Of a stretch of 64,000 nucleotides of DNA, positions 4,924 through 6,733 are shown in pieces. The translations under genes were made by a program, and so were the position numbers. This DNA is from Podarcis erhardii (lineage: Eukaryota): the NCBI GenBank assembly GCA_964252035.1, contig OZ176210.1; one strand, written 5' to 3'. Position 1 is the stretch's first letter, and each line of letters starts with the position of its first letter. A model generated the notes under the pieces. The model saw only the letters and a program-made list of their open reading frames with translations, did no database searches and was not told the DNA's origin.

Positions 4924-5746
4924 TCTGCCTCCACACTTGGAAGCAATAATGCCTCTGAATAAAAGGTAAAAAAAAAAAAAAGTAAAGGTAAAGGACCCCT
5001 GGACGGTTAAGTCCAGTCGATGTTGCGCTCATCTCGCTTTCAGGCCGAGGGAGCCGGCGTTTGTCCACTGACACTTCACAGCTAAGATTCACCTTCTGTT
5101 GTGTTGGCAGGGTGGTCCCTCCCCCTACCTGGCCAATCTCCTGGAAACACCTCCCCAGGCGGGATTGGGCAACTGGCAGAGGTAGGCAGAGACCTCCAGG
5201 TATCCAGCCTGGGGAGGGCGAAGCCAGCCCGTACTACCAGGAGCCACACTGGAATCTGGGGGGCTGTGCGCGACCACGCAAAAGGCACCCTCCATTTGAT
5301 GTGGGGAGCGGTCATTCCGGGGCAAGTAGCCAGCATGACTAAGCAGCTTCTGGCGCAATGGAACACCATGACAGAAACCAGAGCGCACGGAAATGCTGTT
5401 TACCTTCCCGCCACAGTGGTACCTATTTATCTACTTGCACTGGTGTGCTTTCGAACTGCTAAGTTGGCAGGAGATGGGACAGAACAACAGGAGCTCACCC
5501 CATCATGGGGATTTGAACTGCTGACCTTCCAATCAGCATGCCCAAGAGGCTCAGTGGTTTAGACCACAGCGCCACCCACGTTCTGCTTCTGAATATCAGT
5601 TGCTGGAAAGCACAGGAGAGGAGAGTGCTTTTATGCTCGTGGTCCTTCTTGCACCTTTCCCACAGGCAACTGGTCGACTGCTCTCAGAACACGATGCTGG
5701 ACTCAACATGACCTTGGTCTGATCCAGCAGGCTATTCTTATCTCTC
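4924..5746 (+). mobile_element. Older CR1-family 3' UTR (4924-4961 and 5584-5746) split by a Sauria SINE
   Basis: GCTCTGCCTCC...CTGAATA|CAGTTGCTGGAAAG...GATGCTGGAC...CTGATCCAGCAGGCT. Same family as 36782-37030. Confidence 0.7.
4962..5583 (-). mobile_element. Sauria SINE carrying a ~237-nt internal insertion
   Basis: AAAGGT tail repeats and tRNA-like head at 5583. Body matches the other four copies in the window. 12-bp TSD TGC(C/T)TCTGAATA (4950-4961, 5584-5595). Confidence 0.9.
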
Positions 5747-5848
5747 TTACAGATAGGTAGCCGTGTTGGTCTGCCATGGTCAAAACAAAATAAAAAAATT
5801 CCTTCCAGTAGCACCTTAAAGACCAACTGAGTTAGTTCTAGGTATGAG

Positions 5849-5883
5849 CTGAAGAAGTGTGCATGCACACGAAAGCTCATACC
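5849..5883 (+). ncRNA. Minimal type I hammerhead ribozyme core, copy 1 (5' strand of stem I displaced by the inversion)
   Basis: CTGAAGA-A-GTGTGCATGCACAC-GAAA-GCTC-ATACC. Predicted cleavage after C5878. Confidence 0.7.
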
Positions 5884-6045
5884 TAGAACTAACTCAGTTG
5901 GTCTTTAAGGTGCTACTGGAAGGAATTTTTTTATTTTGTTTTGACCATGGCAGACCGACACGGCTACCTATCTGTAACTGGAACTATGGAAGGCACCACA
6001 TTGAGCCGCATGAAATGGAAGTCCATCAACCTCACCAAGAAACTT

Positions 6046-6085
6046 GGTATCTGAAGAAGTGTGCATGCACACGAAAGCTCATACC
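6046..6085 (+). ncRNA. Minimal type I hammerhead ribozyme, copy 2 (complete)
   Basis: Stem I GGTAT(6046-50)/ATACC(6081-85), CTGAAGA 6051-57, one extra A, palindromic stem II 6059-72, GAAA 6073-76, palindromic AGCT stem III. CUC cleavage triplet with the cut after C6080. Confidence 0.8.
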
Positions 6086-6321
6086 TAGAACTAACTCAGT
6101 TGGTCTTTAAGGTGCTACTGGAAGGAATTTTTTAGCTTATCTCTCTTTTTTGTCTTCCTCTGTAGACTTTGGCACTTTTTGAATTTGGAACCTTTTCCAG
6201 CTGCCAGGAACCAAATTTTGAGTACAAAGGAAGAATCAGGAGTGCACTTAGAGTACTTCCTTTTCATCTGTCACAATCTGAACTTTCCCGCACCATGCCT
6301 CATTTCATATATGTCATAAGG

Positions 6322-6457
6322 CAGGCATAGGCAAACTTGGTCCTCCAGATGTTTTGGGACTACAACTCCCATCATCCCTAGCTAACAGGACCAGTGGTCC
6401 AGGATGGTGGGAATTGTAGTTCCAAAACATCTGGAGGGCTGCGTTTGTCTATGCCTG
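6322..6457. mobile_element. 136-bp palindromic hAT-type MITE
   Basis: TIR CAGGCATAGGCAAAC / GTTTGTCTATGCCTG. Perfect 8-bp TSD TCATAAGG. Confidence 0.9.
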
Positions 6458-6733
6458 TCATAAGGCATAGGAAAGGTGAGTATGGATTGTCCAAAATAGC
6501 TTGGTTGGCACTCTCCAAAGCCTAGTGTGCCTACTTAGGTCTGTAGGCCAGAGATCTCCCATCACTGCAATAAGATTAACCCAGGTCTTCTTTTCATTTA
6601 CTTAGTAAACATACATATGCATACATTACTAAACTGCAGGATTGTGTGCATCTTAATCTCAGGGACAAAGGTTCGAGCTCCACATTGGACAAAAAGATTC
6701 CTACATTACAGAGCATTGGACTAGTTGATCTCA

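What the first reader, a model, noticed from the sequence alone, without database searches (positions are those of the whole stretch)
5849..6133. Two hammerhead ribozyme cores exactly 202 nt apart in a mini Penelope element: candidate lizard retrozyme/circRNA unit
Seen: CTGAAGA-A-[GTGTGCATGCACAC]-GAAA-GCTC-ATACC occurs at 5849 and 6051, so the predicted cleavage sites (after C5878 and C6080) are 202 nt apart. Copy 2 has stem I (GGTAT/ATACC). Stem II (14-nt) and stem III (AGCT) are both palindromes, and there is one extra A after A9. Established: Penelope-like elements carry minimal type I hammerheads that cleave as dimers through palindromic stems, and tandem hammerhead repeats of a few hundred nt (non-LTR retrozymes) give small circular RNAs in other animals. 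Inference: this 202-nt pLTR-to-pLTR unit, with no RT or endonuclease, could be a non-autonomous retrozyme-like family in lacertids that releases a 202-nt RNA. In a double-hammerhead fold, core 2 would cut site 1, whereas core 1 has lost its normal stem I strand in this copy.
Basis: partly seen in the sequence, partly recalled or inferred. Interest (0 to 1): 0.85.

Follow-up and report, generated by a model that had tools for sequence, protein, structure and literature searches.

The report
Composite Penelope insertion with twin hammerheads
The two hammerhead ribozyme motifs are real, but they belong to one young 387-base insertion built from end-pieces of a very abundant lizard Penelope-like retrotransposon, and nothing indicates a separate 202-base circular-RNA element.

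Summary
An exact 83-nt repeat (5849-5931 and 6051-6133) carries two identical minimal type-I hammerhead motifs 202 nt apart.

The retrozyme reading is not supported:
- A 12-bp target-site duplication (5737-5748 and 6136-6147) brackets the whole block 5749-6135, so it is one insertion.
- The block has three pieces. There is a 102-nt inverted arm, then a hammerhead module that runs on uninterrupted for 198 nt (5849-6046), then a second short module (6047-6133).
- Public contigs show that 5849-6046 is contiguous family sequence. The odd junction is 6046|6047. Other copies diverge there, and their upstream sequence is different.
- In another organism, tail-to-head junctions occur at varying positions (periods of about 133-161 nt), so 202 is one value among several.
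- No RNA read covers 5987-6041, and no read ends pile up at the cut site.
- Hammerhead 1 lacks a stem I strand and sits at the tip of a 104-bp hairpin.
- Tandem Repeats Finder reports no repeat here (1.4 units).

The motif matches the published Penelope minimal hammerhead feature by feature, including the "extra A". The scan already holds 146 notes with both words, hammerhead and Penelope, apparently all in this genome. The locus is ordinary and of low interest.

The parts
5737..5748 (.). Left copy of the 12-bp target-site duplication (CTTATCTCTCTT)
   Evidence: It is the longest exact direct match between the two flanks. Only 0.1% of 1933 random window pairs of the same geometry reach 12 nt.
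5749..5850 (-). Inverted arm. It is the reverse complement of the stretch from helix III and the cut site to the 'tail' end (5874-5975/5977). Its outer end lies at the family's usual insertion boundary.
   Evidence: Inverted repeat I1 has 104-nt arms, 99% complementary, 23 nt apart. The single mismatch (A in this arm, G at 5957) shows that G5957 is private to the right arm, because all reads carry A there (table 3).
5849..5883 (+). Hammerhead 1: core CUGAAGA, an extra A, the 14-nt helix II palindrome, GAAA, then AGCU and C17, with the predicted cut at 5878|5879. It has no usable stem I 5' strand (GAG lies between GGUAU and C3).
   Evidence: In the MFE fold, C3, U4 and the cut site are base-paired inside the long hairpin.
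5884..5977 (+). Arm and 'tail' of module 1. It ends at the family's main insertion boundary, 99 nt after the cut site.
   Evidence: Depth is very high up to 5977 and then drops. 279 RNA reads have loose ends behind 5978-5980 with heterogeneous flanks (tables 2 and 7).
5978..6046 (+). Continuation of the family sequence beyond the tail. It is repeated in its own right, at about 1-10% of the module's depth. It is open in frame with an ATG at 5947, which may be the start of the ORF (weak inference).
   Evidence: Contigs cross 5977|5978: X15 record 9 (5958-6046, 0 mismatches), X2 records 17-18, X1 record 1. X15 record 9 and X2 records 19-20 stop matching at 6046 although the contigs continue (table 8). 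Frame.
6047..6133 (+). Module 2, a short 'hammerhead-headed' copy. It holds the stem I strand (G)GUAU, hammerhead 2 (6051-6085, predicted cut 6080|6081) and the arm up to the T-run. It has no tail.
   Evidence: It is 100% identical to 5849-5931. Many copies begin at 6044-6050 next to varied AT-rich flanks, and many end at 6133 (table 7).
6134..6135 (.). Two filler bases (AG) between the insert and the right TSD
   Evidence: Direct reading of the sequence.
6136..6147 (.). Right copy of the 12-bp target-site duplication
   Evidence: An X1 contig (record 8) starts matching exactly at 6136, and none of the insert was laid from it. This suggests an empty site in organism A.

Best explanation
The locus is one young composite insertion (5749-6135, 387 bp, 12-bp TSD). 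It is made only of terminal pieces of a very abundant lizard retroelement family that carries Penelope-type minimal hammerheads.

Shown:
- The TSD brackets the whole block.
- All three arms share minority family variants, so they come from one source.
- Two of the three arm ends (5749 on the left, 5977 in the middle) coincide with the family's main boundary, 99 nt after the cut site. The third (6133) lies at the second recurrent boundary, 55 nt after the cut. The two boundaries are 44 nt apart, like the published 'tail' between the two internal reverse-transcription start sites of the anole Poseidon element.
- 5849-6046 is contiguous family sequence.
- The head of module 2 (6047) lies at the family's usual 5' boundary.

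Inferred mechanism:
- The element's enzyme made a staggered break and primed reverse transcription on both DNA strands from the internal start sites.
- The cDNA on one strand copied a short module (6133 back to 6047). It then jumped to a second RNA at 6046 and copied back through hammerhead 1.
- The cDNA on the other strand gave the inverted arm.
- The two were joined at a 2-nt overlap (CT at 5849-5850).

On this reading the 202-nt spacing is a by-product: 198 nt of contiguous sequence plus 4 nt of the next module's head. It is not a functional unit. The hammerheads are the family's ordinary ribozyme motifs. Here, copy 1 is disabled and copy 2 depends on a partner.
For: - Repeat anatomy.
- TSD of 12 bp, p about 0.001.
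-, table 2: summed depth on 6053-6129 is about 0.9-1.6 million in X1, where a single-copy contig has about 8. On 5987-6041 it is 2.7-18.7 thousand. On the right flank it is about 0-30.
-, table 8: contigs cross 5977|5978 and diverge at 6046.
-, table 7: 355 RNA reads show a different, consistent upstream sequence before 6047 (agreement 0.79). Heterogeneous AT-rich flanks lie before 6044-6050, behind 5978-5980 and behind 6133.
-, table 3: this locus carries T at 6086 and C at 6097, where about 95% and 90% of family reads carry A and T. Searches show that all three arms are identical at these positions.
-, table 5: X2 contigs join 5978-5980, 5991 or 6010 to 6044-6052, so tandem junctions vary.
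- PMC11167929: in vitro, the anole Poseidon enzyme cuts and extends both strands. It starts reverse transcription at two internal sites that bound the 'tail', and it uses uncleaved RNA.
- PMC4209133: PLE minimal hammerheads have a long helix II, a helix I of 4-5 bp, an unpaired base between A9 and G10.1, G10.1-C11.1 and a palindromic 15.2-16.2. Pairs of them occur 100-700 bp apart on opposite strands.
Against: - The Penelope assignment rests on the hammerhead architecture, the insertion anatomy and unchecked earlier notes.
- The protein search with the 34-aa frame from 5947 gave only spurious repeat-protein hits.
- No full-coverage DNA run of the window's own species was laid, so other copies of the 6046|6047 junction in this genome are not excluded.
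- Two-ended priming and a template jump cannot be told apart from snap-back self-priming, or from copying an already composite RNA, using one locus.
- The contigs that cross 5977|5978 have fewer than 31 nt on one side, which is below the tool's own criterion for bridging.
Confidence: 0.8

Rival explanations
1. The 202-nt stretch between the two cut sites is the unit of a non-autonomous, retrozyme-like family. The two hammerheads release it as a linear or circular 202-nt RNA, which the Penelope enzyme then copies back into the genome.
For: - Two intact catalytic cores lie in direct orientation.
- Core 2 can form helix I (5 bp) and helix III (4 bp) with site 1.
- Head-to-tail module junctions exist elsewhere in a related organism (table 5).
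- A 2026 preprint argues that vertebrate non-LTR retrozymes, including those of reptiles, derive from PLE pLTRs.
Against: - Only 1.41 units are present, and TRF finds nothing.
- The TSD brackets the block together with an inverted arm, which is not a retrozyme feature.
- The junction 6046|6047 is not found in the contigs that reach 6046.
- No RNA read lies on 5987-6041, while about 1,000 lie on the modules.
- No read ends pile up at 6080|6081.
- Site 2 cannot be cut by core 1, which has no helix I.
- Site 1 lies inside a 104-bp hairpin (-199.8 kcal/mol). The core 2/site 1 fold costs +79 kcal/mol in a nested model when the arm is present and +16.6 when it is absent.
- Tail-to-head junctions elsewhere give periods of about 133-161 nt, not 202.
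Confidence: 0.04
2. Two successive insertions. A fold-back copy (5749-6046) came first. A separate short module (6047-6135) then homed in beside it, since Penelope-like elements tend to insert into or next to earlier copies.
For: - PLEs are reported to insert into or beside pre-existing copies (PMC6765202; PMC11167929).
- The head of module 2 at 6047 and its end at 6133 are the usual boundaries of free-standing short copies (table 7).
Against: - Only one TSD is visible, and it brackets the whole block. No separate duplication flanks 6047-6135.
- All arms share the minority variants at 6086 and 6097 and are 100% identical.
- 6046 is not a usual insertion boundary.
Confidence: 0.1
3. A DNA-level rearrangement after insertion, such as replication slippage or unequal exchange, duplicated part of a simple fold-back copy.
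For: The two 83-nt copies are identical, as expected for a recent duplication.
Against: - A tandem duplication would give two full 202-nt units. Here only 83 nt repeat, and no rotation of the unit fits.
- The second copy starts at the family's usual 5' boundary and ends at a usual 3' boundary, which points to reverse transcription.
Confidence: 0.03

Closest known systems
Minimal type-I hammerheads of Penelope-like elements (Cervera & de la Pena 2014, PMC4209133; dimer cleavage shown by Lunse et al. 2016/17, cited in PMC6765202)
   Same: - Core CUGANGA ... GAAA, with C17 at the cut site.
- An unpaired base between A9 and G10.1.
- A G10.1-C11.1 pair and a long helix II.
- A helix I of 4-5 bp.
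- No helix III loop, with a palindromic AGCU that can only pair between two motifs.
- Massive copy number, mostly as truncated single motifs or as nearby pairs, including pairs on opposite strands.
   Different: The sequence family is lizard-specific. Helix II is a perfect 14-nt palindrome, so two motifs can also pair through helix II. In silico this is the preferred dimer, at -37.2 against -17.7 kcal/mol for the active dimer. No cleavage data exist for this family.
Poseidon_Ac (PAc) of Anolis carolinensis, with internal initiation of reverse transcription (Frangieh et al. 2024, PMC11167929)
   Same: - The hammerhead lies just upstream of the region where reverse transcription starts.
- There are two start sites bounding an optional tail. 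Here the boundaries lie 55 and 99 nt after the cut. In PAc they lie about 82-89 nt after it.
- Both DNA strands are cut and extended in vitro, which would give mirror-image copies.
- No RNA-seq read ends are seen at the cut site, either in that study or here.
   Different: There is no sequence similarity to the PAc consensus. In PAc the ORF starts inside helix II. Here that frame stops after 7 codons, and the possible start is an ATG in the tail (5947).
Metazoan non-LTR retrozymes (Cervera & de la Pena 2020, PMC7229834; Li et al. 2026 preprint 10.64898/2026.07.22.740005)
   Same: Type-I hammerheads in direct orientation a few hundred nt apart, low GC (43.6%), no coding capacity in the unit, a TSD longer than 4 bp, and a proposed origin from PLE pLTRs.
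   Different: - There are not two full units, and TRF detects nothing.
- The hammerheads are minimal, not canonical, and lack loop-loop contacts.
- One hammerhead is disabled.
- An inverted arm is present.
- The unit is not found to recur.
- No RNA was detected from the unit-specific part.
- The unit is not strongly self-paired (circular MFE -37.9 kcal/mol for 202 nt).

Membership tests
PLE-type minimal hammerhead (min-HHR) | Conserved core C3-U4-G5-A6-N7-G8-A9 and G12-A13-A14, an A15.1/U16.1 pair, and H17 (not G) at the cut site | tested here: met
   Both copies read CUGAAGA ... GAAA-GCU-C. The family shows no variant at 5% or more inside the core, apart from C>U at position 17 (6080), which is still a permitted H (table 3).
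PLE-type minimal hammerhead (min-HHR) | [quoted passage not shown] | tested here: met
   A5856 and A6058 are the extra base. Helix II is the palindrome GUGUGCAUGCACAC, which folds as 5 bp plus a tetraloop. PMC4209133 lists these features.
PLE-type minimal hammerhead (min-HHR) | No stable helix III, with palindromic 15.2-16.2 so that helix III forms only between two motifs | tested here: met
   A-GC-U directly precedes C17. The monomer fold has no helix III.
PLE-type minimal hammerhead (min-HHR) | A short helix I (4-5 bp) formed by the sequence just 5' of C3 and just 3' of the cut | tested here: met
   Met for copy 2 (GGUAU/AUACC). Not met for copy 1, where GAG is inserted and 2.1-2.4 cannot pair.
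PLE-type minimal hammerhead (min-HHR) | Location in the terminal repeat of an element that encodes RT and GIY-YIG endonuclease | tested here: inconclusive
   No RT or EN ORF is present in the 387-bp insert, and there is no other copy in the window. The 34-aa frame search was uninformative. The link rests on anatomy and on unchecked earlier notes.
PLE-type minimal hammerhead (min-HHR) | Self-cleavage, as a dimer or with protein help | not testable with these tools
   One RNA-seq run shows no excess of read ends at 6080|6081 (table 6). The same was reported for PAc.
Rfam hammerhead families (Hammerhead_1, _3, _II, HH9, HH10) | A match to the covariance model | tested here: not met
   There is no hammerhead hit at gathering score in the window, and none at E<=10 in 5700-6200. 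This is expected, because the motif has no intramolecular helix III.
Non-LTR retrozyme | A tandem repeat with at least two consecutive complete units, each carrying a hammerhead (Li et al. pipeline: TRF, then a motif search) | tested here: not met
   Only 83 of 202 nt are repeated (1.41 units). TRF gives 0 rows even at score 30.
Non-LTR retrozyme | The same unit recurs at many loci or in arrays | tested here: inconclusive
   Contigs that reach 6046 diverge there, and junctions elsewhere give other periods. No full-coverage DNA run of the window's own species could be laid, and no genome BLAST is available.
Non-LTR retrozyme | Expressed as small (about 170-400 nt) linear or circular RNA | tested here: inconclusive
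   One bulk RNA-seq run, sampled at 12%, has 0 reads on 5987-6041 against about 1,000 on the modules. Standard libraries lose small RNAs. The 'goes back' joints (6130-6133 to 5934) only reproduce the normal arm-to-tail continuity seen in copy 1, so they are no evidence for a circle.
Non-LTR retrozyme | Canonical type-I hammerhead with loop 1-loop 2 contacts (2020 definition) | tested here: not met
   The motif is minimal. It has no loop 1, and helix I is open (PMC7229834).
Penelope-like element insertion | Target-site duplication of variable length at an AT-rich target | tested here: met
   A 12-bp TSD, CTTATCTCTCTT (75% A+T).
Penelope-like element insertion | 3' boundary at internal reverse-transcription start sites, with an optional tail of 30-40 bp | tested here: met
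   Boundaries at 6133 and 5977 are 44 nt apart in module coordinates. Both are recurrent, with heterogeneous flanks in hundreds of reads and contigs (table 7). Definition: PMC11167929.
Penelope-like element insertion | Partial tandem and/or inverted upstream copy | tested here: met
   An inverted arm and two direct modules.

The most novel reading that the evidence does not exclude
Head-to-tail arrays of this family's short hammerhead modules, with periods of roughly 130-200 nt and this locus as a two-module example, may behave as PLE-dependent retrozyme-like elements in lacertid lizards. In that case they would give small self-cleaved or circular RNAs. Standard RNA-seq would miss these because of their size and their 5'-OH and cyclic-phosphate ends.
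Probability: 0.08. Interest if true: 0.45.

Novelty: new member of a known kind. Interest (0 to 1): 0.15.

Why it matters
It matters little as a discovery. Penelope-like elements with minimal, dimer-type hammerheads, their tandem and mirror-image layouts, and the idea that animal retrozymes derive from their terminal repeats are all published. The locus is still a clean natural example of what the in-vitro work on the anole element predicts. It has insertion ends at two internal start sites, a mirror-image arm ending at the same start site, and a single TSD around everything. That is useful when annotating such blocks, so that they are not miscalled as ribozyme genes, microRNA hairpins or retrozymes.

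Tried and rejected
- Rfam at gathering score over the whole window and at E<=10 over 5700-6200 gave no hammerhead hit. The sub-threshold miRNA hits (mir-559 at 66.7 bits against a cutoff of 95, and others) only reflect the long perfect hairpin.
- Searches of the window for further copies of the arm, the tail, the middle segment or a loose hammerhead pattern found none beyond this locus.
- I translated the frame from the ATG at 5947 (34 aa) and searched 1.84 billion representative proteins. The two hits are spurious. One is a 2469-aa internally repetitive protein whose weak matches add up. The other is a SAXO-family protein. Neither has RT or GIY-YIG domains. The idea that 5947 onward is the ORF start therefore remains a weak inference.
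- Exact-pattern scans of metagenome contigs (2 scans) and of prokaryotic genome contigs (1 scan) for the hammerhead found nothing, as expected for a vertebrate repeat.
- The look-up of earlier findings by sequence was blank.
- The 'goes back 197-200' joints in RNA reads first looked like back-splice evidence. I rejected that, because the laid stretch began at 5932, so any ordinary copy with a tail produces this joint.
- My first assumption that X1 and X2 were low-coverage runs was wrong. Their contig sets total 1.2-1.6 Gb. A bridging contig alone therefore does not prove multiple copies, and I relied on summed depth instead.
- ARAGORN found no tRNA-like gene in 5200-6600.
- The Lunse et al. 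paper (PMC5785218) is not held.

Full report
**Observation**

The region was read directly. The 35-nt string holding the hammerhead core, helix II, GAAA, AGCU-C and AUACC occurs exactly twice in the window, at 5849-5883 and 6051-6085. No shuffle gave a match. The identity extends to 83 nt at 100% (5849-5931 and 6051-6133), with a spacing of 202. A looser hammerhead pattern finds the same two sites, against 0.03 expected by chance.

- Hammerhead 1 sits between the arms of a 104-nt, 99% inverted repeat (5747-5850 against 5874-5977, 23 nt apart).
- The whole block is bracketed by a 12-bp direct repeat, CTTATCTCTCTT, at 5737-5748 and 6136-6147. Only 0.1% of 1933 random window pairs with the same geometry share 12 nt. 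So 5749-6135 (387 bp) is one insertion with a target-site duplication.
- Only 83 of the 202 nt are repeated. Tandem Repeats Finder reports nothing here, even at score 30.

**Is the motif a hammerhead?**

Rfam gives no hammerhead hit at gathering score or at E<=10. Those models need an intramolecular helix III, which this motif lacks. Cervera and de la Pena (PMC4209133) describe the minimal hammerhead of Penelope-like elements (PLEs). Its features are:
- the conserved core;
- a long helix II closed by G10.1-C11.1;
- an unpaired nucleotide between A9 and G10.1;
- a helix I of 4-5 bp;
- a palindromic 15.2-16.2 with no loop 3, so that helix III forms only between two motifs.

The same paper reports pairs of such motifs 100-700 bp apart on opposite strands, and very low cleavage in vitro. 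The anole element Poseidon_Ac has the same layout with a different sequence.

**Family context from public runs**

I laid 5932-6250 on one raw RNA run (X24, the window's species label), one small contig set of the same species label (X15) and two whole-genome contig sets of other organisms (X1, X2).

- *Depth.* The module 6047-6133 and the tail 5943-5977 are enormously repeated. Summed depth in X1 is about 0.9-1.6 million, where a single-copy contig has about 8. The right flank is at about 0-30. The middle segment 5978-6046 is also repeated (2.7-18.7 thousand in X1, 93-555 thousand in X2), at roughly 1-10% of the module.
- *Continuity across 5977|5978.* Contigs cross this point. X15 record 9 matches 5958-6046 without a mismatch. 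X2 records 17 and 18 match 5965/5967-6026. X1 record 1 matches 5933-5992.
- *Divergence at 6046.* X15 record 9 and X2 records 19 and 20 stop matching exactly at 6046 although the contigs continue for 32-129 nt.
- *Upstream of the hammerhead.* 355 RNA reads that enter the hammerhead from the left carry a different and consistent upstream sequence before 6047 (agreement 0.79). Many DNA contigs begin the module at 6044-6050 next to varied AT-rich flanks.

So 5849-6046 is contiguous family sequence, 6047 is the usual head of short copies, and the only unusual junction in the '202-nt unit' is 6046|6047.

**Boundaries**

- Heterogeneous flanks follow 5978-5980 in 279 RNA reads and follow 6133 in 330 (table 7). 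These two recurrent ends lie 99 and 55 nt after the cut site, 44 nt apart.
- Frangieh et al. (PMC11167929) showed that the anole PLE starts reverse transcription at two internal sites that bound an optional 30-40-bp 'tail'. They also showed that the enzyme cuts and extends both DNA strands, and that uncleaved RNA is the template.
- Here the right end of the insert (6133) is the short boundary. The end of module 1's tail (5977) and the outer end of the inverted arm (5747-5749) are both the long boundary.
- All three arms are identical and carry minority variants. They have T at 6086, where about 95% of reads have A, and C at 6097, where about 90% have T (table 3). They therefore come from one source.

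**Most likely history (inferred)**

A staggered break set 12 bp apart was followed by reverse transcription primed on both strands from the internal start sites. One cDNA copied a short module, from 6133 back to 6047. It then jumped to a second RNA at 6046 and copied back through hammerhead 1. The other cDNA produced the inverted arm. The two were joined at a 2-nt overlap (CT at 5849-5850).

Snap-back self-priming would also give the hairpin. It would not explain why the inverted arm stops at the canonical start site. A simple DNA tandem duplication does not fit, because no rotation of a 202-nt unit is present twice.

**Is 202 nt a unit?**

The evidence is against it.
- In X2, single contigs join 5978-5980, 5991 or 6010 directly to 6044-6052. 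This gives tail-to-head periods of about 133-161 nt at different loci (table 5). Tandem junctions therefore vary, and 202 is one value among several.
- No RNA read lies on 5987-6041, while about 1,000 lie on the modules.
- 98% of the laid RNA reads run on into unrelated sequence, as expected for read-through of dispersed copies.
- No place shows an excess of read ends, including 6080|6081 (table 6).
- The 'goes back' joints from 6130-6133 to 5934 only reproduce the ordinary arm-to-tail continuity seen in copy 1, and are not evidence for a circle.

**Folding**

- The hairpin 5747-5977 has an MFE of -199.8 kcal/mol and pairs C3, U4 and the cut site of hammerhead 1.
- Forcing the core 2/site 1 hammerhead costs +79 kcal/mol in a nested model with the arm present. 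At the least, the top ten pairs must open. Without the arm the cost is +16.6 kcal/mol.
- Core 1 cannot form helix I with site 2, so site 2 needs a second molecule.
- Two hammerhead-2 motifs prefer to pair through the 14-nt helix II palindrome (-37.2 kcal/mol) and not as the active dimer (-17.7).
- The 202-nt stretch is not strongly self-paired (circular MFE -37.9).

**Comparison with known kinds**

The motif is a member of the PLE minimal hammerheads. The block has the anatomy of a truncated PLE insertion, with a TSD, tail boundaries, and inverted and direct partial copies.

It fails several retrozyme features:
- it does not have two full units;
- the hammerhead is not canonical;
- one ribozyme is disabled.

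Recurrence of the unit and expression as a small RNA were tested, but the results are inconclusive.

The concept that vertebrate retrozymes, including those of reptiles, derive from PLE terminal repeats is already in a 2026 preprint. Earlier notes of this scan report 146 entries with both words, hammerhead and Penelope, apparently all in this genome. They include short hammerhead-headed copies, palindromic insertions and other tandem spacings (184, 172 and 49 nt). I used these as leads only.

**Limits**

- No genome-wide search of the window's own assembly was possible, and only one RNA run was sampled.
- Summed contig depths are not true copy numbers.

**Verdict**

This is a real but ordinary feature: a young composite Penelope-type insertion whose two hammerheads lie 202 nt apart by accident of assembly. 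Interest is 0.15.

Noticed in passing
window 6082-6110 (family-wide, from reads laid on the arm): Six sites show strand-specific changes in the raw RNA run. T>C appears only when the first mate is on + (6082, 6092, 6096, about 11-14%). A>G appears only when it is on - (6098, 6109, 6110, about 12-23%). In the DNA contigs of X1 these variants are at most about 0.05% of depth. This is the signature of A-to-I editing of double-stranded RNA formed by fold-back copies. The DNA and RNA are not from the same animal (table 3).
   Followed up: partly
window 6136-6250: An X1 contig (record 8, 383 nt, depth 7.9) starts matching exactly at the first base of the right TSD, and none of the insert was laid from it. 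This suggests an empty site in organism A and a lineage-specific, recent insertion (table 8).
   Followed up: no
window 5978-6052 (joints seen in run X2): Separate contigs join the tail end (5978-5980, 5991, 6010) directly to the head of another hammerhead module (6044-6052). These are head-to-tail short copies with periods of about 133-161 nt in another organism (table 5).
   Followed up: partly
window 6310-6469: A second, unrelated inverted repeat with 68-nt arms, 82% complementary and 24 nt apart. It looks like a small fold-back or MITE-type repeat.
   Followed up: no
window 5947-6048: An ATG in a strong initiation context (ACCATGG) inside the 'tail' opens a frame that stays open through the middle segment (34 codons). 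It may be the start of the family's ORF. The homology search was uninformative.
   Followed up: partly
window 5802-5922: The perfect hairpin scores as several microRNA precursor families below their thresholds (mir-559 at 66.7 bits against 95). This is a likely source of false miRNA annotations in lizard genomes.
   Followed up: no
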